Part shown: piece by piece, positions 49,301-57,627 of the stretch
Position numbering within the stretch: position 1 is the stretch's first letter
Layout: every line of letters begins with the position of its first letter
Origin: Sminthopsis crassicaudata
Lineage: Eukaryota
Assembly: GCF_048593235.1 (NCBI RefSeq)
Contig: NC_133619.1
Location: 517,603,644-517,667,643 of the forward strand
Length of the DNA stretch: 64,000 bases
Reading direction: 5' to 3'
Position numbers and translations under genes: made by a program
Notes under the pieces: generated by a model
What the model saw: the letters and a program-made list of their open reading frames with translations, nothing else
Told to the model about the DNA's origin: nothing
Databases searched by the model: none

Positions 49301-52300
49301 CATTCACCACCTGCAGCACTCCCAGAGAGCAAGAAAGAGAGGGATGATTGATGACTGAGATTTAGCTCAGGCTAGCCCAGAGGGTGGCCCAGCCCCCCCC
49401 TTCCCCACTTCTGACTCTTGTGTCAAAAGGAGACCATGAGGCATCTATCAGGAGGGCCCCATCTCTGGGGGACAGCCGAGGAAGAAAAGAGGCCTAGAAT
49501 TTGGGGGCAGGCAGACTCTGCCCCTCTTACCGTCTGGTAGGTGATCACCAACTGTACCACTGGGAGGGCATAGAAAACGGCAATGGTGGCGATGTTCCTG
49601 TGCAGGGAAGGATGGATGATGAACGAAAAAGACTGGAAGAGGATCCAGCCCTTGCCCCTTCCCCACACCCCCTCCCAAAAGCCAAACCGGACCCCTTCCG
49701 CTCACCAGAAGTAAATCTGGTACTTCTTTCGAAGGACCCGTTTGTCCTTCCGGGCTAGGTCTGCTACATACAGGTATTGCTGTGGGGGAACAAGAGAACA
49801 TGACTGAGGGAACAGCAGGAGGTCAGCTTTGCCCAGGGCCTTGGGAAAGTCCTTGAGAACAAGAACAAAGGTTGGACCCCCTTTACGGACGGACCACGGC
49901 CCAAGAACAAACTCTTAAATGAGTGACCACACTGGCTCCAGGTGTCCCTCCCCGGAGGAGCCAGCCTCAAACTGGATGGTGTACCCCGGGCTGGGCCCCT
50001 GCCCTCGGCCTCCTCTGAGGCTCTGGGCCAGAGACGCATAGGGCAGCCCCGGACCTTGGTGCGGATGACGTTTTTGTCCGACTCGATGTCCGTCAGTGTG
50101 TCGTAGTCGTCCTCCTCCACAGAGCTCAGGGAGTCCAGCCGAGGCCGGCTGCCCACGGGGTCTAGGGGGGGAAGGAAGGTGAGAGCCGCTCACACTGTGG
50201 CAGGACCCCTGGGAAGCTGGCCCCTGCTCACCTGGGGCAATTGTGGAGATTACAGAATGGGGAGGGGCTTATTGGGGGGTTAGGATGGGGAGAGACCGAG
50301 GGGAGCTCAGTGTCCAGGGAAACCACATGTCCTTTCCCCTTGTGGTACATGAGGAGTGAAGGGGACAGATGGTCAGGCGGATTATTCCCCTGCCCCATCT
50401 TCTCCCTTAGAGAGCGGGACACACCGAACCCGCAACACTGAGCCCACCTCAGGCTTAAGGCAAGGGGATGATTTCCAGGGGCTTCATGCAGATTAGAGGT
50501 GCCACCATCTCCGTGTGTTCTGAGAGGGCAGGGCTGTGGCACCCGGGGAGCTAAAGGTCCAGTGCCCTCTGGGGTGCCACGGGTGGAGACCACCACCCAT
50601 CAGCCCACTTTAAAACCTAACCCTGACACCCAGCCCAGCAAGGGCCCCACAGCGGTAAGAGAGCATCATTAGTGGGATCCTCTCTAGTCCGGCCCCAATT
50701 CCCTCCGCAGCCAGAGGGAAGCTGATGGGTCATGGGTCAGTGCTTCACCATGTGGCAAGGTCAGCCCAGAAACCCCTCGTAGGAGAGTCCTGAGGAGGAA
50801 CGGAGGGGGATGGGAAAGGCCTGGATGTGGGCACCCACCCGCTAACGCTGTAACCGACAAGGAAAAGCGCCAGCCTCTCTCAAAAGACACGGAGGATCAG
50901 TTATCACAAATATTACATGATAACATATGCGGACAGGGCATCTATTGAGCATCTTCCCAAGCCCCAAGGACAGGGCAGCCCCAAGCCAGGCCACGGCTTC
51001 AGCCAGCCCCAGTGCCCACCACAGGCAGGAGCTGGTTGGCAAAGCGAGTGCTCTCCCCACATCTACCCATGGCAATGCACAGCTGCCGCATCTGGCCAGA
51101 GGGGAGACGTCGCTTGAACTGGTCATGTCCTTCAAAGGAAAGGGAGAGTTACTGGGAGGGCGTCCAGGGAAAGTGGGGGGACCAGGCCAAGGAGGGAACG
51201 TGGAGAACTAGAGGTCCGGCCCCGATGCCATTGCTTGTAGAGAAGGGGAAGAGGAAGGGACCTCCTCGAACAGACACACACTACCTCTGGCCCAGCCAAC
51301 ACCAGCCCTGGCACGTTTCTGCCCTGCCTCTGCCTGGCACTCACCCGAGTAGCTGTAGGAGACGTCCACAGAGCCAGTGCTGTCCACTGCTCCGTCAGCA
51401 GAGCTGGAGCCATTCTCTGTGGAGACCAAGAGACCGATGAGGGGAGGCAGGTGGGGTCTGGCCAGGAAGATACAAGTCTAAAAAGTGCCAGAGATGGGGC
51501 AGCAGGGGACTTCCCTGGGGGTCTTTACATTGGATAGTGATGGAGATTAAATGGCAGCGGGCAGTTTCACCTACTCATTTGGGAAGACAAGATGATCACG
51601 TGATCTGGTGGGTCTTAACCTTTTCTGGTGAAGTCCACAGACCCCTTCCCAAAATAATGTTTCCAAATGCGTGAAATAAAGCATGTGGGATTACAAAGGG
51701 ACCAGATCATATTGAAATCGTTTTTGCAAAAATAAATGAATAAATAAGGAATAAAGAAAGGAAAGATTCACCAACCCCAGATTAAGAACTCTTGTCCCCT
51801 AGGAGAGGCCGGCTTAAAATGGCCCCAAAACAGCTAGGTTGTGGGGGTGGGTCAGAGGAGGAGTCTTCAAGGAGCACCTACCAAAGGAGCCATAACTGTA
51901 ACCTTCATAAGGGGCAGAGCCAGGGAACGATTCAGCCAGGACTCGAGGGTGACCTGCAAAGGAGAAATCAGAGCCTGATCAACACCTTAGGCAGTCACAG
52001 GCCTGGACCTGACGATATAAGACAGAAGGGGCTGGGGACAGGCAGACTAAGCCTGGAGATAGAGGCTTGGAGCTTCAGGGAAAAATAATTACACAGCCAA
52101 CCAAAACCACTTGTGTTCCCTCTCCCCTTTTCCCTCATCAGATACCCTGTTAACCTAAATAGGGTAAAAACATCCTGCCAATAGAGGAATGGACACCAGG
52201 ACCCCTCAGATCCCACCTGGCCATAGTTCATGTGTTCAAGTGCACTTAATGAGTACAAGTGATATGCGAGGCCTGGTGCTTCCCTCCCCCACTGTCTCAT

Positions 52301-55300
52301 CCTGTCCCCTGAGAGCCCAAGGCCCTAATCCCACCCAGCACCTGTAGCTTACCAAGCAAAGAGGCTGGAAGAGAAGGTCACAAACAGGAGAGATTGTTGG
52401 GCGCAGGGGGGAGAGAGAGAGAGAGAGAAAGGTTACGCTCTTGTGAAATGGGACAGGCTGGAAGACAGAAGGCCAGCAGGATTAAAAGAAGAATAAAGCA
52501 AGGAGCAGCTATGTTTTTCAAGAGGCAGATGGGAAGTGGAGGAGACATAACCTCCGACCCTCATCCTCACCCCTTGGGTCTTAATCTATGGAAACCTCAG
52601 CCAATTGCCTTTGGCCAGAAGACTCTGGCCTCTCAGGCCCAGGACCATAAGGCCCAGAGACTCTGCCCCTCTCCCCCCAAGCCTGCCAGGACAGTGCCCT
52701 GAGAGGTACCGCTTTCTGAGCAGGGACGGTCCATTGCCACCAACAGGGTCTTCTTCCGTTGCCTGTGAGAAAGGATGAAGGGGTTACAGGGTGGGGTCTA
52801 GGCTCTGGATCCCTGCTACCTTCTGTCCACCCTCTCCCTCCCCGCTGCTGATCACCAAGTCCTTTTCCTTCTCCCAAACCCAGCCTTCTCTAGGCTGAAG
52901 GTACAGGGCTCAGAGGAATGGCTGGGAGAGTGAAGCTTCCATTTTCTCTATCGGGGGAATTGTGGACTATGGGCAACAGAGCATCCGGCAACCGGTTCTC
53001 CTCCTCATCCCATTCAGTTTGTCTTAGGGGAGTTTGGGGGGTGGGGGGGTGTCCCCCTGGGCAGGAACAGCAGAGCAGGGGAAGTAAAAGGGAACAGGGG
53101 AAATCTCCCTGACCAAGCCCACAGGTCGGCTGGACTGGCATCCAAAGGCCGAGAAGGCCCGGCCCGATCCGCCCCGGCTCACCTCCAATTCTCCCAGCAG
53201 GCCAGCAGCACGGTCAGCAGATAGAAGGACAGGAAAATGCCCAGGCAGAAGAGCATGCCCCCGACATATGCCTCGGCTGGGGACAAAAGGAGGGGGGCAG
53301 AGGTGGGAGAGGGGGATCAGCACAGGGCTCCCGGACAGCTCAGGGGGGCCGCAGGGACACAGGGGCCAGCGCCCCGCCTCTCGATGGGCTGGAACAGCCG
53401 AGGAGCGCCCGGCAGGCCCGGGGCAGTAACTTGCCGTGTCCCTCGGAGGAGGCCCCAGGCCCATCCCCAGAGCCCCTCCCCGCCGGCTGGCCACACTCAC
53501 ACGTGACTGCTGGAGACACCACAACGCTCAGGGTTTTCTGGTGATGCCCTTGATCCACCGGTTCATCTGGACGTAAAAGTCAAGTCAGTGCGGGAGGCCT
53601 GGAGTGTGGCCTGAGGCTTGAGGGACCAGGCAGGAGAGAGGCTGACACCCCCACCGTCCTGAGCCCCGCTGCACGCCCCGGCCGGCCTCCCACGGCTCCT
53701 GCGCCCTGCGCAGCCCAGCCCGGAGCCCAGCCCCTACCTTCCCCATAGGGGTAATAGGGCAGGGAGCCCCCGCAGGCCTGGTCCTCGGTCTTCACCACCA
53801 CCACCACGTAGAAGCTGTTGCTGGGAAAGTCCTTCCGCTACGGAGCACACAAGAGAACCGGCCTCCCTCAGAGCCCGGCCGTCTGCGGACTCACACCACA
53901 AGGGACGGGGAAAAGAGAGGCGGGGCCGGGGCCTTCACACCCCAACAAAGGGGCCCAGGGAAGGACCGGGCAGACCAGAAGAGACAGCACACGGGCCGAC
54001 AATGCAGAAGAAAAAGGGAGGAGGGGACAAGGTCCCGGGGACGGCCACAGCCCTTCAGCGTCCAGGGGCCGGCCTACCTGCACAGTGATGGCTGCCTTCT
54101 TCGTCATGGTCTGGTACATGCCGATGAAAGCCACGTTGTTGTCCAGATCATAGACGGGGCACTACGACAGGGGGTGGGGGTGGGAGGAGCGTATGAAGGA
54201 CTGAGCCTTATTATCCCTTTAGGGAAGCCTTGCCCCCGCTCTAAGGGAAGCAGGTTCGGGCCCACTTACCAGGATGTCCTGGATGGAAATGACTGAGCAG
54301 GGGAAAGCCTTGCTGGAAGTCACTTTGACAATCACCGAGTCTACTCCTTCTGGGAACTCATACTTGAAGTACTAAAGAACAGAGGGGCAGACGGCCTTCT
54401 CTCAGAGTAGGCTCCTCTCCGGAACGGCACTACCTATGAGCTTTTGGGGGTGGGGCCCGCAGGAGGCAGCACGCCCAGCAGAGCTGTTGCCTTTTCTGAG
54501 CTGATCTCTTTGCCGGGTTTGTGCCGATCTGAAGGCCGAGTCTCTGTACCCTCAGCCCCCCAAGGCTTGGCACTCAGTGTACCACAGGCAGGACTGCCGG
54601 CATGAGTTTACCTGAGGCTGCGCTGCAGTGGTGTTAAAGCTGAACTGTTCACCGGTCCTGTGGGGCAGAGAGAGAGGAGCGTCACTCTCAGGAAGGCGTC
54701 CCCTCGGGCCGCCCCTTCCTCTCCCAGCAGTCCCAGCCCTGGCTCAAACCTGAGCACGAAGTTGTCCATGTGGCTGACCCGCAGCCGGTAAGTGGTGTTG
54801 AGCAGCGACAGGGTGGACACGTCCACGTAGAAGAACTGGACCTCAGCCTCACTCTTGGTGGGCGGCTGGCAGAGAGTGCGCGCCACATCCTGGTACCGGT
54901 ACTTACGCTGGTAGCTGTGGCCCAAGGCGGGGAGTCAGCGGGAAGCTGCTCTTTCCTCCCCTAACCACCTCCGCCCCCCCAAGGTAAGTCTGGCCCAGAG
55001 GGCCTGGGTCCGGAGGAAGGGCAAGTTGGCAGGAAAACTTGGTGGGGCCTTTCCCCGGATCTGGTTACTCTGCCCCACCAGCTCCGGGCCTGGGCCCACA
55101 AACACTCTCCTCCAGGTGCACTTAATATGTGACTGAGTGCCTGGATTTAGGGCAAGAAAGTGCTTTAGCCTTGGTGGGAGGGAGCTCTCCGAGAAGTGCG
55201 GACAGTTTCCTAGCTGTGTTCCTAGGGGAGGTGGGGATGAGGGCCCGTCCCCCCCAGCAGCTCCCACATGGTACTCACAGCCCCCGGAGAATCAGCGGCA

Positions 55301-57627
55301 CCTGGAAGGATACCACGGCCTCCTTCTGTCGGACCACAAACAGCACGGGGGCCTTGTTCTGCTTGTTCAGGACGTTCACAGACACCCGCACGCCCTCGGT
55401 CTGGGGGACAGGCGTTTAGTCAGCCCAACTCTCCCGCCTCGTTTTCCTAACATGACCCCCTCCCGGCCAACATGGCTATTCTTCTCCAGTGCCGGGAGGG
55501 GGCAGGACTCAGGGGTCAAGGCCCAGGGTCCGTGCTCCCTGCCTACACCCGAGCCAGCAAGTCAGCGGGGGCTTCCGCCGGGGCTGTCCTCACTGATGCA
55601 GCGGCAGCTTCGGGAGAGACGCCGCGGACTCAGTCGGGAGCCCTCACTACCTCCATGAGCCTGAATAAGTCACTCAATTTCATCCCTTGGTCTTCCGTGT
55701 CACCGGGCTGGCCGCACCGCACAGGCCCGTGGGTAAGCGTGCAGTGAGACAGAGGCCACCAGGCGCTCCGTGACTGACTGAAGCGCTGCACAAAGGCCAG
55801 ATGTCATCCGGCGGGAGACCGGGCCCTCGGCCTCGGAGGGCGAACGAGAGTGCCGCGGAACCACGAGGGCCCGTCCTGGGTGAGGGAGTCTCCTCCCTGG
55901 AAACCAAAGTGCCAGAAGGGCGGCTCCTATCTAACAACGAGCCGCGGAGGATACCCCATTTCTGACCCCAACTCCGCCGGCTTTAGACCAGGTGAGTCTA
56001 ACCCGGAAGTTTAAGCCTCGGTTTATCCATCTGTGAAATGGGCAGACCGTCTCTCAGTGATACAGAGGAAGAAAGCTCATGGGCTTTATGAAGGAGAGAA
56101 TGGTGATAACTATCAGGGGTTACTAGAGATAAGGACCCCCTCTCCCCCCCCCAGGAAGAATCTACATGTCCCAGGGGGTAGGATCCAGAGCCCCGCCCCC
56201 AGACCCAAAGCGAGCTCCAGGTTGGAAGAGAAATAAGGCCCCAGTCTGAATAGAGAAAAGCTACAAAAGGTCAGAGTTCAAAGAACAATCTTCCAGCAAC
56301 GAGAGCCAGCCAGCAGCAGAGACTAAGCTGTTCCTTTTCCCACCAGAAAAACAAAAAGGTAACAGGTGTCTCCAAAGTTCTCAATGGGGGGGGGGGCTAC
56401 TTTACACTGTGGAAGGTTGTTCAGGACTCCTCCTCCGTGGCTTTTACTTATGTAGTGTAACAATTAACACTGGCACACCAGAAAATTAAAGGACCCCTAT
56501 CATTGCGGAACGTTTCGGCCTCGCAGACCCTTCGGAGACTTGGAGACCGCACCTGGAGACCGAGTAGTCTCTCACGGCTCAGACACCGAAGGGCTCTCGG
56601 GGAAAGCCCGCTCTGGATGACCTCTGGCCCCGAGGCCGCAAAGTTCCCAAGTGGCTCGGGCCCACACCCGGACGTCTCTCAGACCCCACCAGGGCAGACC
56701 TTATCAGGCCCTCCTCAGGAACGCCTTAAAATCACGCAACAAGGTAGCTCTGAGGGTGCGGGTGAGTGGGGGGGGAGCAGGGCTTCCGGCCCAGACCCCT
56801 TCTCCTCTGATGGAGCCCCCCCCTTCCCCGCAGAGCCGGGGAGCTCTCGGGAGAGCCGCCCGGCGGCCCGGCCTGCGCCAGCGGGGAGGTGGGAAGTAAC
56901 TTTTCTAATCTCGCACCGTCGGTGACCTTTCAGCCCCGGGCCCGGCGCAGCCCCTCGGGCGGCTCCGCACAGGGCGGGGTGGGGCCCCGAGCCCGGGCCA
57001 GCGGGAGGGGGGGGGGGGGCCGGACGCCAGAACGTGGGCAACAGCTGGGAGCAGCAGGTCCAGGCCCACCCAAGCCCCGCGTGGGGCCCCGGAAGGAAGG
57101 AAGACCGCGAGAAGGGAAAAGAGAAGGAAGAAACTTCGGGACTCCCCGCACTCCAGCTCCGGAAAAGAAACAAATAAAGCCGAAAACAAAACCAGACAGA
57201 GCGGGGGAGGAGAGGGGGAAAAGGGAGGGGGGGAGGGGAAGGGATTAAGCAAGAAGTCCCTGGGGCCCGGAGCTCCGGCCCGAGGAGTCGGGCCGACGGC
57301 AGCGGCCCGAAGGGGGGCGGAGGGAGCAAGGCTGGGGGGCGGCCCAGCAGCTGCATCGCCTGCACACGGGGGTACGCGCCCCACACCAACGACCCCCCAA
57401 ACCGCGCGCGGGCCAGAGCGCGCTCACGGCGCCCGAGCGCTCACCCGGTTTCGGGTCACGGTGTGGTTGAACGTGTAGATGTTGACCAGCTCGCTGTTGA
57501 CCTCATCCTCGTAGACTCGCTCAAACTCGGCCTCCTTCTGGGACACGTTCTTGGGTCCCGGGGCCCCCGGGGCGCCCTCGGCCGCGGCCAGCAGGAGCAG
57601 CAGGAAGGGCAAACCCACGGCGAACAT
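40297..57627 (-). CDS. SIDT2: SID1 transmembrane family member 2, complete; 26 core exons = 2487 nt / 828 aa, 853 aa with both optional exons
   Basis: All exons GT-AG and phase-consistent; [12 protein letters not shown]... to ...[11 protein letters not shown]; YGSF/YDTL tyrosine motifs and YHVCP / DHDIWH Zn ligands present. Confidence 0.97.
40566..40679 (-). CDS. SIDT2: SIDT2 exon 25 ([13 protein letters not shown]...DDHDIWHF...GSFL)
   Basis: cccag| and |gtaatt. Confidence 0.95.
41370..42780 (-). mobile_element. L2 LINE fragment(s) in SIDT2 intron 24 (another L2 3' end at ~43195-43600)
   Basis: L2 3' tail (tgaataaataggtatttattaaattcctattatgtggcaggcattgtgctagg) followed by purine-rich antisense ORF2 remnants. 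Confidence 0.65.
43893..43956. repeat. Perfect 26-bp inverted repeat with a 12-nt loop
   Basis: tgtttactcttgtctttgattagcct (43893-43918) / aggctaatcaaagacaagagtaaaca (43931-43956). Confidence 0.95.
44015..44125 (-). CDS. SIDT2: SIDT2 exon 24 (LRSGERIKL...GLSTWQ)
   Basis: ttcag| and |gtgagt. Confidence 0.95.
45026..45131 (-). CDS. SIDT2: SIDT2 exon 23 ([12 protein letters not shown]...FYIIMK)
   Basis: tgcag| and |gtaagt. Confidence 0.95.
45486..45532 (-). CDS. SIDT2: SIDT2 exon 22 ([15 protein letters not shown])
   Basis: tctag| and |gtgagt. Confidence 0.95.
46012..46088 (-). CDS. SIDT2: SIDT2 exon 21 ([25 protein letters not shown])
   Basis: tgcag| and |gtatgt. Confidence 0.95.
46495..47050. 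mobile_element. RTE-associated marsupial SINE (WALLSI-type), second copy
   Basis: Collinear similarity to 36830-37272. Confidence 0.65.
47291..47399 (-). CDS. SIDT2: SIDT2 exon 20 ([10 protein letters not shown]...GRWKL)
   Basis: aatag| and |gtaaga. Confidence 0.95.
47779..47915 (-). CDS. SIDT2: SIDT2 exon 19 ([10 protein letters not shown]...FSVLGV)
   Basis: tacag| and |gtgagt. Confidence 0.95.
48428..48545 (-). CDS. SIDT2: SIDT2 exon 18 (ECGIPKHFG...[12 protein letters not shown])
   Basis: aatag| and |gtaaaa. Confidence 0.95.
48999..49122 (-). CDS. SIDT2: SIDT2 exon 17 ([11 protein letters not shown]...NDLYAL)
   Basis: cccag| and |gtaaga. Confidence 0.95.
49237..49310 (-). CDS. SIDT2: SIDT2 exon 16 ([24 protein letters not shown])
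   Basis: tgcag| and |gtaggg. Confidence 0.95.
49531..49597 (-). CDS. SIDT2: SIDT2 exon 15 ([22 protein letters not shown])
   Basis: cacag| and |gtaaga. Confidence 0.95.
49706..49779 (-). CDS. SIDT2: SIDT2 exon 14 ([24 protein letters not shown])
   Basis: cacag| and |gtgagc. Confidence 0.95.
50055..50161 (-). CDS. SIDT2: SIDT2 exon 13 ([22 protein letters not shown]...IRTK)
   Basis: cctag| and |gtccgg. Confidence 0.93.
51067..51129 (-). CDS. SIDT2: SIDT2 optional 63-nt cassette exon ([21 protein letters not shown])
   Basis: cctttgaag|GACAT...CATGG|gtagat; phase 1-1; matches my recollection of the longer eutherian SIDT2 isoform. Confidence 0.85.
51345..51416 (-). CDS. SIDT2: SIDT2 exon 12 ([23 protein letters not shown])
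   Basis: cacag| and |gtgagt. Confidence 0.93.
51606..51794. mobile_element. Old hAT/Charlie-type MITE, same family as 15094-15261
   Basis: Shared cttaacctttt...aaaataatgtt...attgaaat...gattaagaactc. Confidence 0.6.
51882..51953 (-). CDS. SIDT2: SIDT2 exon 11 ([23 protein letters not shown])
   Basis: tgcag| and |gtaggt. Confidence 0.95.
52353..52364 (-). CDS. SIDT2: SIDT2 optional 12-nt microexon (adds ASLL)
   Basis: cttctcttccag|CCTCTTTGCTTG|gtaagc; phase 1-1, frame-preserving; long AG-free pyrimidine tract upstream. Confidence 0.8.
52710..52762 (-). CDS. SIDT2: SIDT2 exon 10 ([17 protein letters not shown])
   Basis: cacag| and |gtacct. Confidence 0.93.
53183..53276 (-). CDS. SIDT2: SIDT2 exon 9 (TM1: [12 protein letters not shown]...CWENW)
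   Basis: cccag| and |gtgagc. Confidence 0.95.
53501..53566 (-). CDS. SIDT2: SIDT2 exon 8 ([21 protein letters not shown])
   Basis: tccag| and |gtgagt. Confidence 0.95.
53738..53837 (-). CDS. SIDT2: SIDT2 exon 7 ([10 protein letters not shown]...YYPYGE)
   Basis: cgtag| and |gtaggg. Confidence 0.95.
54078..54161 (-). CDS. SIDT2: SIDT2 exon 6 (CPVYDLDNN...AITVQ)
   Basis: cgtag| and |gtaggc. Confidence 0.95.
54270..54371 (-). CDS. SIDT2: SIDT2 exon 5 (YFKYEFPEG...IQDIL)
   Basis: tttag| and |gtaagt. Confidence 0.95.
54612..54657 (-). CDS. SIDT2: SIDT2 exon 4 ([15 protein letters not shown])
   Basis: cacag| and |gtaaac. Confidence 0.95.
54750..54914 (-). CDS. SIDT2: SIDT2 exon 3 (YQRKYRYQ...DNFVL)
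   Basis: cacag| and |gtttga. Confidence 0.95.
55279..55400 (-). CDS. SIDT2: SIDT2 exon 2 ([11 protein letters not shown]...LILRG)
   Basis: cccag| and |gtgagt. Confidence 0.95.

What the first reader, a model, noticed from the sequence alone, without database searches (positions are those of the whole stretch)
52353..52364. 12-nt SIDT2 microexon whose inclusion creates an acidic dileucine sorting signal (ESASLL)
Seen: intron 10 holds cttctcttccag|CCTCTTTGCTTG|gtaagc, phase 1-1, after an AG-free zone of ~70 nt with a (CT)n tract and a branch-like cgTAAC (52437-52432). Exon 10 ends ...C-S-E-S-G. With the microexon the loop reads CSESASLLGHPRV; without it, CSESGHPRV. Known: E-x-x-x-L-L is the canonical [DE]XXXL[LI] motif bound by AP-1/AP-2/AP-3. 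SIDT2 is a lysosomal membrane nucleic-acid transporter, and this loop after TM1 is cytosolic and already carries YxxPhi signals (YGSF, YDTL). Inference: the motif exists only across the exon 10/microexon junction, so splicing would act as an on/off switch for an extra trafficking signal. I recall an ASLL insert in some eutherian predicted isoforms (unverified), but not this sorting interpretation.
Basis: partly seen in the sequence, partly recalled or inferred. Interest (0 to 1): 0.82.

Follow-up and report, generated by a model that had tools for sequence, protein, structure and literature searches.

The report
Ancient neural SIDT2 microexon adding ASLL
This is a real, already catalogued 12-base alternative exon of the lysosomal nucleic-acid transporter gene SIDT2; it is conserved from fish to mammals, is switched on in human neurons, and adds four residues (ASLL) that complete a textbook adaptor-binding "acidic dileucine" motif, though I found no test of whether it changes where the protein goes.

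Summary
On the minus strand, ttctcttccag|CCTCTTTGCTTG|gtaagc sits at 52364..52353 in the 756-nt intron between SIDT2 exon 10 (ends CSES) and exon 11 (starts GHPRV). It is phase 1-1 and adds A-S-L-L.

It is not a chance match. It is the only good acceptor/donor pair in the intron and the only hit to a strict pattern in 64 kb. The same microexon, with its splice sites, is present in the genomes of another marsupial, platypus, camel, pigeon, a sea turtle and a teleost, and differs almost only at synonymous sites. Predicted isoforms with and without the insert are annotated in many mammals, birds, reptiles and fishes.

In human it is VastDB event HsaEX0058272 (12 nt; matched by gene and length). 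Published tables give PSI 13% in neural precursors against 72% in mature neurons, and 16-22% rising to 49-57% when SRRM4 is expressed. So the exon itself is already known.

The sorting reading is plausible but untested. The acidic residue at -4 (E or D, in the constitutive exon) and the LL never vary. The loop is cytoplasmic and flexible. Only YxxPhi signals are described for SIDT2 in the papers I could search.

The parts
52710..52762 (-). SIDT2 exon 10 (constitutive). Encodes [17 protein letters not shown] plus the first base of a split codon. It supplies the Glu at position -4 of the motif. Its donor GCG|gtacct is weak.
52367..52437 (-). 71-nt AG-free zone upstream of the microexon. It holds the branch-like cgtaac (52437-52432), the (CT)n/C-rich tract (about 52430-52405) and the polypyrimidine tract ttgtgaccttctcttcc.
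   Evidence: a CT-rich tract upstream is present in all five species aligned
52365..52366 (-). Acceptor AG of the microexon
   Evidence: CAG invariant in 5 species
52353..52364 (-). 12-nt microexon CCTCTTTGCTTG, phase 1-1. It inserts Ala-Ser-Leu-Leu and rebuilds the following Gly codon.
   Evidence: orthologous exons found; protein isoforms
52347..52352 (-). Donor gtaagc of the microexon
51882..51953 (-). SIDT2 exon 11. Encodes (G)[23 protein letters not shown] and includes the YGSF YxxPhi signal.
   Evidence: Y359GSF binds AP-1/AP-2 according to the literature quoted
53182..53292 (-). Exon 9, which encodes transmembrane helix 1 ([31 protein letters not shown]). The first Leu of the inserted LL lies about 24 residues after its cytoplasmic end.
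   Evidence: approximate bounds from tblastn

Best explanation
Shown:
- The 12-mer is a bona fide, frame-preserving alternative microexon of SIDT2 in a marsupial genome.
- It is orthologous to an exon present in teleosts, turtles, crocodilians, birds, monotremes, marsupials and eutherians.
- It inserts ASLL about 24 residues after transmembrane helix 1, in the flexible cytoplasmic domain between TM1 and TM2.
- The peptide, not just the RNA, is under purifying selection.

Shown for the human orthologue only, from published tables:
- Inclusion is low in non-neuronal cells and neural precursors and high in mature neurons.
- Inclusion rises when the neural splicing factor SRRM4 is expressed.

Inferred:
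- With the conserved acidic residue encoded two codons before the end of exon 10, the insert completes a [DE]XXXL[LI] acidic dileucine motif: E-S-A-S-L-L here, D-T-A-S-L-L in birds and turtles, E-T-A-S-L-L in fish.
- This motif would give the neuron-enriched isoform an extra contact with the sigma/large-subunit hemicomplex of AP-1, AP-2 or AP-3, on top of the known YxxPhi-mu contacts.
- That extra contact would alter how fast or by which route SIDT2 is endocytosed and delivered to late endosomes and lysosomes.

My confidence that the exon is real and conserved is about 0.97. My confidence that it works as an AP-binding dileucine signal is about 0.4-0.45. The figure given below is for the whole statement, mechanism included.
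For: Sequence and splice signals.

Orthologous genomic microexons, each with AG and GT:
- Dromiciops: identical 12-mer.
- Platypus: ACTCTCTCCTTG (DSLL).
- Camel: CTTCTCTCCTTG.
- Pigeon: CATCTCTCCTGG.
- Flatback turtle: CGTCTTTACTGG.
- Trachinotus (teleost): CCTCTCTGCTTG, extended to 27 nt.
Ala uses all four codons and the Leu codons vary, so the changes are synonymous.

Local conservation: the bin holding the microexon is the most conserved of the intron between the window and Dromiciops, at 0.93 against 0.40-0.85 in the other bins. The microexon and its splice sites are the invariant island in the 5-species alignment A1.

Isoform pairs with and without the insert occur in many species. The wombat form reads ...DRPCSES-ASLL-GHPRV, with an upstream peptide identical to the window's. 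Several full-length proteins with the insert, from a turtle and from fishes, come only from Logan assemblies of sequencing runs, on contigs of 3.8-5.1 kb (transcript-sized). The 836-aa hamster form is also held by Logan.

Conservation of the motif, from an unbiased MAFFT alignment of 234 unique loop segments: position -4 is E in 149 and D in 77 of 228. Both Leu columns are L in all 99 sequences that carry the microexon. The four residues before the acidic one are highly variable. The only insert variants seen are DSLL, ESLL and APLL, so they fall at X positions.

Human HsaEX0058272, 12 nt (PMC7935315 S6, S9 and S11 Data):
- MCF7: PSI 22.5 to 49.0.
- MDA-MB-231: 15.9 to 57.2, SRRM4 wild type against the inactive mutant.
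- Xenografts: 0 to 32.5.
- Neural precursors 12.7 against day-50 neurons 72.4.

Topology and precedent: the domain between TM1 and TM2 is cytoplasmic and unresolved in cryo-EM because it is flexible (PMC10272179). SIDT2 is sorted by cytosolic YxxPhi motifs that bind AP-1 and AP-2.
Against: - No binding or trafficking data exist for the ASLL isoform in anything I could search.
- Ala (96 of the 99 microexon-bearing sequences) and Ser (98 of 99) are nearly as invariant as LL. [DE]XXXL[LI] does not require this, so a more specific partner or an added RNA-level constraint is possible. The Ser codon is TCT in all seven genomes.
- The regular expression is short: about 1 match per 500 random residues by my estimate.
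- The LL lies about 24 residues from the membrane. From memory, that is further than the 6-11 residues typical of dedicated lysosomal dileucine signals.
- The 832-aa isoform without ASLL already reaches lysosomes through YxxPhi motifs, so the insert is not needed for basic targeting.
- HsaEX0058272 is equated with this exon by gene name and 12-nt length only; I saw no coordinates.
- The UGC element typical of SRRM4-dependent microexons is not close to the acceptor here. The nearest TGC is about 40 nt upstream.
Confidence: 0.45

Rival explanations
1. The microexon is real and its peptide is selected, but ASLL is a short linear motif or structural element for something other than AP complexes. 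Candidates are a neuron-specific partner, a phospho-regulated S-x-S-x-S-L-L element, or a modulator of the nearby nucleic-acid-binding cytoplasmic domain or of YxxPhi accessibility.
For: All four inserted residues are nearly invariant, not only LL. A second conserved acidic residue sits at -9 (D in 215 of 234). The cytoplasmic domain also binds RNA/DNA through an arginine-rich motif (Hase 2020, cited). Neural microexons often tune protein-protein interactions of many kinds; this last point is from general knowledge.
Against: The three positions that define the dileucine motif are exactly the ones that never change across more than 400 My. The rare substitutions (A>D, A>E, S>P) fall at X positions, and APLL and DSLL remain canonical. 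The protein is a known AP-1/AP-2 client. No alternative motif class that I checked by eye (clathrin box, DXXLL, LIR) fits.
Confidence: 0.3
2. The conservation reflects RNA-level constraints on a tiny exon (splicing enhancers, exon definition). The four residues would then be a tolerated by-product, and the biological point of the event would be something other than the peptide.
For: Microexons generally have strongly conserved sequence and flanks. The Ser codon TCT is identical in all seven genomes, and CAG/C.TCT.T.CT.GG.A.G is invariant.
Against: The Ala codon uses GCC, GCT, GCA and GCG, and the Leu codons use TTG, CTC, TTA, CTG and CTT, while the amino acids stay fixed. That is the signature of selection on the protein. 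The exon is frame-preserving, with no stop, in every lineage.
Confidence: 0.07
3. A chance AG...GT pair in an intron, or an annotation artefact carried between genomes by homology-based gene prediction.
For: Many of the isoforms are automatic predictions. No reads were laid on this genome.
Against: The pattern is unique in the window and in the intron. It is conserved at the DNA level, with its splice sites, in seven genomes. Insert-bearing proteins also come from Logan assemblies of sequencing runs. Human RNA-seq PSI values show regulated inclusion.
Confidence: 0.02

Closest known systems
Human SIDT2 microexon, VastDB event HsaEX0058272 (12 nt), listed in Head et al. 2021, PLoS Biol, PMC7935315, S6/S9/S11 Data
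   Same: Same gene and same 12-nt length. Rodent, bat, camel and whale isoforms place the ASLL insert at the identical position, CPES-ASLL-GH. It is an alternative cassette regulated by SRRM4 and by neuronal differentiation.
   Different: The window is a marsupial orthologue (CSES-ASLL-GHPRV). The published tables give only PSI values and no functional reading. I equate the two by gene and length, not by coordinates.
YxxPhi sorting signals of SIDT2 (Contu et al. 2017, J Cell Sci 130:2843; cited in PMC12684396 and PMC10402054)
   Same: Same cytoplasmic TM1-TM2 domain and the same proposed effectors (AP-1, AP-2). The YGSF and YDTL motifs are encoded in this window 22 or more residues downstream of the insert.
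   Different: Those are tyrosine-based, constitutive, bind the mu subunit and have been tested experimentally. ESASLL is leucine-based, depends on splicing, would bind the sigma/large-subunit hemicomplex, and is untested.
Canonical [DE]XXXL[LI] acidic dileucine signals of endolysosomal membrane proteins, for example LIMP-II DERAPLI and tyrosinase EEKQPLL (from memory; Bonifacino and Traub 2003)
   Same: An acidic residue at -4 and LL at 0/+1, in a disordered cytosolic segment of a lysosomal membrane protein. The gecko variant DTAPLL even has the Pro at -1 seen in LIMP-II and tyrosinase.
   Different: About 24 residues from the membrane rather than 6-11. It is split across an exon junction and so conditional on splicing. 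No binding data exist.
Vertebrate neural microexon programme (SRRM4/SRRM3-dependent exons of 3-27 nt)
   Same: Size, frame preservation, deep vertebrate conservation, a location in a disordered region next to interaction motifs, neuronal up-regulation and an SRRM4 response in human.
   Different: Baseline inclusion outside neurons is appreciable (13-22%). No UGC lies close to the acceptor in this window. A long CU-rich tract and a distal branch-like site suggest additional regulators such as PTBP, which is untested. In teleosts the exon is 27 nt (ASLLGKNGD).

Membership tests
Vertebrate neural (SRRM4-responsive) microexons | Cassette exon of 3-27 nt that preserves the reading frame | tested here: met
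   12 nt, phase 1-1, no stop
Vertebrate neural (SRRM4-responsive) microexons | Deep conservation of the exon and its splice sites across vertebrates | tested here: met
   Found with AG/GT in Dromiciops, platypus, camel, pigeon, turtle and a teleost. Isoform pairs occur in many species.
Vertebrate neural (SRRM4-responsive) microexons | Higher inclusion in neurons and increased inclusion when SRRM4 is expressed | tested here: met
   Human orthologue only, from published tables: neural precursors 12.7 against neurons 72.4; SRRM4 inactive mutant against wild type 22.5 to 49.0 and 15.9 to 57.2.
Vertebrate neural (SRRM4-responsive) microexons | UGC motif within about 20 nt upstream of the acceptor | tested here: not met
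   In the window the nearest TGC is about 40 nt upstream. Camel has one at about -21. Pigeon and the teleost have none within 40 nt.
[DE]XXXL[LI] acidic dileucine sorting signals | Sequence pattern: acidic residue at -4, Leu at 0, Leu or Ile at +1 | tested here: met
   E-S-A-S-L-L across the exon 10/microexon junction
[DE]XXXL[LI] acidic dileucine sorting signals | Located in a cytosolic, accessible (unstructured) segment of a membrane protein | tested here: met
   From the literature: the domain between TM1 and TM2 is cytoplasmic and invisible in cryo-EM because it is flexible (PMC10272179). The insert lies about 24 residues after TM1.
[DE]XXXL[LI] acidic dileucine sorting signals | Motif-defining positions conserved while X positions may vary | tested here: inconclusive
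   Position -4 is always E or D (226 of 228) and LL is invariant (99 of 99). The variants DSLL, ESLL and APLL fall at X positions. However, the X positions Ala and Ser are themselves about 97-99% conserved.
[DE]XXXL[LI] acidic dileucine sorting signals | Direct binding to AP-1, AP-2 or AP-3 sigma/large-subunit hemicomplexes that depends on LL and on the acidic residue | not testable with these tools
   No experiment found. Needs yeast three-hybrid or pull-down.
[DE]XXXL[LI] acidic dileucine sorting signals | Mutating LL changes endocytosis or lysosomal delivery | not testable with these tools
   No data found. Published sorting work used the 832-aa isoform that lacks the insert.

The most novel reading that the evidence does not exclude
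Neuron-specific, SRRM4-driven inclusion of the ASLL microexon switches on a second, leucine-based adaptor-binding signal in SIDT2. The neuronal isoform would then be routed or internalised differently from the ubiquitous isoform, for example through AP-3 or through faster AP-2 endocytosis. Nucleic-acid uptake into lysosomes, or dsRNA handling, would be tuned by splicing. The junction-spanning motif has been kept for more than 400 million years for this purpose.
Probability: 0.35. Interest if true: 0.6.

Novelty: new member of a known kind. Interest (0 to 1): 0.4.

Why it matters
SIDT2 is studied as the lysosomal importer or receptor for RNA and DNA (RNautophagy, dsRNA innate immunity) and in lipid and glucose metabolism. 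According to the papers I could read, structural and sorting studies describe the 832-residue protein without this insert. The data assembled here say that the form made in mature human neurons (about 72% inclusion) carries four extra residues that have been kept since before fish and mammals diverged.

If those residues are an adaptor-binding dileucine, neuronal SIDT2 would have a different trafficking itinerary from the one characterised so far. It would also be a clean example of a sorting signal assembled across a regulated exon junction. Even if the dileucine reading is wrong, the conservation shows that the insert has some function worth testing.

The exon itself is not a discovery: it is in gene annotations and in VastDB.

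Tried and rejected
1. Read-level test in this organism. The look-up of sequencing runs gave 23 runs. It still counted as the call, so I have no junction evidence here.

2. The look-up of encoding contigs failed for isoforms that are not the longest product of their gene: wombat X3, naked mole-rat X5 and beluga X1. I switched to longest isoforms, which worked.

3. Supplements of PMC12714141 (the A1CF beta-cell splicing paper, which names SIDT2 among mis-spliced genes), PMC6014294 (mouse liver cell types, with an RT-PCR-validated Sidt2 isoform switch) and PMC4387716 are not held. I cannot say which SIDT2 exon those papers refer to.

4. Sidt2 is absent from the held supplements of MicroExonator (PMC7821500) and of the zebrafish neuronal microexon study (PMC12626424).

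5. Contu et al. 2017 is not held. Its content is taken from two citing papers.

6. Searches for SIDT2 with dileucine or di-leucine returned only papers where the two words occur in unrelated contexts.

7. A broad six-term search found no paper linking SIDT2 to SRRM4, SRRM3 or PTBP1 in its main text.

8. My first conservation table was circular, because the regular expression itself required [DE][ST]..LL. I redid it with an unbiased MAFFT alignment.

9. Motif classes I considered and rejected by eye: DXXLL (GGA type; the acidic residue is at -4, not -3), the clathrin box and LIR.
Full report
**1. The observation**

SIDT2 lies on the minus strand of the window. The start codon is near 57627 and the last coding exons lie near 44-45 kb. 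Searches show ...gaccttctcttccag|CCTCTTTGCTTG|gtaagc with the 12-mer at 52364..52353, exactly as reported.

- The upstream exon (52762..52710, the tenth coding exon by tblastn) encodes [17 protein letters not shown] and ends with the first base of a split codon. Its donor, GCG|gtacct, is weak.
- The downstream exon (51953..51882) begins GT-CAC-CCT-CGA.
- Skipping the 12-mer therefore gives CSES-G-HPRV, and including it gives CSES-A-S-L-L-G-HPRV. Phase 1-1 is correct.
- The AG-free zone is 71 nt (52437..52367). The CT repeat and the cgtaac at 52437-52432 are also as described.

Two quick controls argue against chance:
- Among all 140 AG..GT pairs 3-51 nt apart in the 756-nt intron, this is the only one whose crude acceptor and donor scores both reach 5 (10.2 and 7.5).
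- A strict pattern (eight pyrimidines, N, CAG, 12 N, GTRAGY) matches once in the whole 64-kb window on both strands, against 0.05 expected from shuffles.

**2. What it is**

I obtained full-length SIDT2 proteins by searching one conserved exon of the window against the representative library. I then ran three homologue searches and one cluster look-up.

The window's own peptides are closest to marsupial SIDT2. Wombat and Dromiciops have the identical [17 protein letters not shown].

Isoform pairs that differ by exactly this insert are annotated widely:

| Group | Junction and insert | Examples |
|---|---|---|
| Eutherians | CPES-ASLL-GH | mouse 857 aa, Mus pahari 836/857, hamster 836, naked mole-rat, beluga, camel, cattle hybrid, bats, jaguar |
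| Marsupials | CSES-ASLL-GHPRV | wombat, Dromiciops |
| Platypus | CSES-DSLL-GHH | seven annotated isoforms, with and without the insert |
| Birds | SLDT-ASLL-GH | 846 against 850 aa in the same species; rhea has ESLL |
| Turtles and crocodilians | TDT-ASLL-GH | |
| A gecko | TDT-APLL-GH | |
| Teleosts | PAET-ASLLGKNGD-GK (9 residues) | 846 against 855 aa; one species shows ASLL alone |

Several insert-bearing proteins, from a turtle and from fishes, come only from Logan assemblies of sequencing runs, on contigs of 3.8-5.1 kb (transcript-sized). The 836-aa hamster form is also held by Logan.

I then fetched genomic loci for six species and found the exon in the orthologous intron of each:

| Species | Microexon with flanks |
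|---|---|
| Dromiciops | ag\|CCTCTTTGCTTG\|gtaagc (identical to the window) |
| Platypus | ag\|ACTCTCTCCTTG\|gtaagc |
| Camel | ag\|CTTCTCTCCTTG\|gtaagc |
| Pigeon | ag\|CATCTCTCCTGG\|gtaggt |
| Flatback turtle | ag\|CGTCTTTACTGG\|gtaagc |
| Trachinotus (teleost) | ag\|CCTCTCTGCTTG-GGAAGAACGGAGATG\|gtatag |

In the fish the 12-nt donor position reads GG and the exon runs on to 27 nt.

The Ala codon appears as GCC, GCT, GCA and GCG, and the Leu codons as TTG, CTC, TTA, CTG and CTT, while the amino acids stay the same. That is selection on the peptide.

In the five-species alignment the invariant columns are the acceptor CAG, most of the exon and the donor, preceded in every species by a CT-rich tract. 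Between the window and Dromiciops, the 40-nt bin that holds the microexon is the most conserved of the intron, at 0.93 against 0.40-0.85 in the other bins.

**3. Regulation, from the literature**

The supplementary tables of Head et al. 2021 (PMC7935315) list "SIDT2 HsaEX0058272, length 12".

- Expressing wild-type SRRM4, compared with an inactive deletion mutant, raised its PSI from 22.5 to 49.0 in MCF7 and from 15.9 to 57.2 in MDA-MB-231. The event occurs five times in the file listing exons with a PSI change of 25 or more across six cell lines.
- In xenografts PSI went from 0 to a mean of 32.5.
- In the neuronal differentiation data set they reuse, PSI is 12.7 in neural precursors and 72.4 in day-50 neurons.

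I equate this event with the ASLL exon because it is the only 12-nt (4-residue) difference among the SIDT2 isoforms I collected. I did not see coordinates.

So the exon is a catalogued, neuron-enriched, SRRM4-responsive microexon with graded inclusion, not all-or-none.

One typical feature of SRRM4 targets, a UGC close to the acceptor, is not present in the window; the nearest is about 40 nt upstream. The long CU tract and the distal branch-like site suggest further regulators, which I did not test.

**4. How it most likely works**

The cytoplasmic domain between TM1 and TM2 is unresolved in cryo-EM because it is flexible (PMC10272179). It carries the three YxxPhi motifs that target SIDT2 to lysosomes. 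Y359GSF binds AP-1 and AP-2 (Contu 2017, as quoted). The window encodes YGSF and YDTL.

The insert places LL four residues after a glutamate of exon 10, giving E-S-A-S-L-L. This fits the [DE]XXXL[LI] class that binds the sigma/large-subunit hemicomplex of AP-1, AP-2 and AP-3 (established knowledge, recalled from memory).

An unbiased alignment of 234 unique loop segments gives the test that sequence can offer:
- The residue at -4 is E (149) or D (77) in 226 of 228 sequences.
- The four residues before it vary freely.
- Both Leu columns are L in all 99 sequences that carry the microexon.
- The only insert variants (DSLL, ESLL, APLL) change X positions and stay canonical.

This is the pattern expected of a functional acidic dileucine whose acidic half sits in a constitutive exon.

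Against it:
- Ala and Ser are almost equally invariant, and an aspartate at -9 is also conserved. The real ligand may therefore read more than the minimal motif.
- The signal is about 24 residues from the membrane.
- The isoform without the insert already reaches lysosomes.
- No binding or trafficking experiment exists in what I could search.

I put the AP-binding reading at about 0.4-0.45. A different peptide-level function comes in at about 0.3. RNA-only constraint or artefact is well below 0.1.

**5. Comparison with what is known, and novelty**

As a sequence feature this is already known. It is in RefSeq-type gene models of dozens of species and in VastDB, and its SRRM4 and neuronal regulation sits in published supplementary tables.

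Three things appear to be new, relative to the papers I could search:
- The explicit reading that inclusion completes a junction-spanning acidic dileucine motif.
- The demonstration that the motif-defining positions are invariant from teleosts to mammals.
- The marsupial and monotreme instances.

It is therefore a new, untested member of a known kind: alternatively spliced short linear motifs, here a sorting signal. It is not a new kind of system.

**6. Limits**

- No reads were laid on this genome.
- Amphibians, lungfish, coelacanth and cartilaginous fishes were not sampled.
- Most squamate isoforms returned lacked the insert, which may reflect sampling.
- Many isoforms are automatic predictions.
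- My splice-site scores are crude matrices written from general knowledge, not MaxEnt.

Noticed in passing
window 51067-51129 (minus strand): A second alternative cassette in the same cytoplasmic domain. It is a 63-nt, phase 1-1 exon (ag|GACATGACC...GCCATGG|gtagat) encoding (G)[20 protein letters not shown]. It accounts for the 21-residue difference between the 832/836-aa and 853/857-aa isoforms (mouse NP_001276597 carries it) and is basic and arginine-rich. The stretch 51061-51109, which tripped the read laying filter, lies inside it.
   Followed up: partly
window 52676-52709 (minus strand), just after exon 10: The bilby isoform X2 reads through the weak exon 10 donor for 33 nt ([21 protein letters not shown]). 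The window has the corresponding in-frame sequence ([12 protein letters not shown]) but no GT donor at the matching place, so this alternative donor does not seem to be shared.
   Followed up: no
L004:5825-5851 (Trachinotus) and proteins P0176/P0211, P0237: In teleosts the orthologous exon is 27 nt (ASLLGKNGD), because the position of the tetrapod donor reads GG and the donor lies 15 nt further on. One fish (Centroberyx, P0237) has an annotated form with ASLL only, so both donors may be used in some fishes.
   Followed up: partly
proteins P0272, P0274, P0276, P0278, P0284, P0302, P0348; window exons at about 53182-53292 and 52710-52762: Several mammals, a marsupial and one bird have annotated isoforms that skip both the TM1 exon and exon 10 (…AVT-CHPRV…, 779-815 aa; the bird reads …ITW-HARSIP…). 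These would remove transmembrane helix 1 and the acidic half of the motif. I did not check whether they are real or annotation noise.
   Followed up: no
papers PMC6014294 and PMC12714141: Mouse liver hepatocytes and non-parenchymal cells show an RT-PCR-validated Sidt2 isoform switch. SIDT2 is also among the genes mis-spliced in HNF1A- or A1CF-deficient human beta cells. The tables are not held, so I could not tell whether the ASLL exon or the 63-nt exon is meant.
   Followed up: partly
protein P0041 (Fukomys damarensis, 730 aa): A database protein named DENN domain-containing protein 3 is a fusion of a DENND3-like N-terminus with a degraded-looking SIDT2 C-terminal half. It is probably a retrocopy or a gene-model artefact. 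I used it only as a search handle.
   Followed up: no
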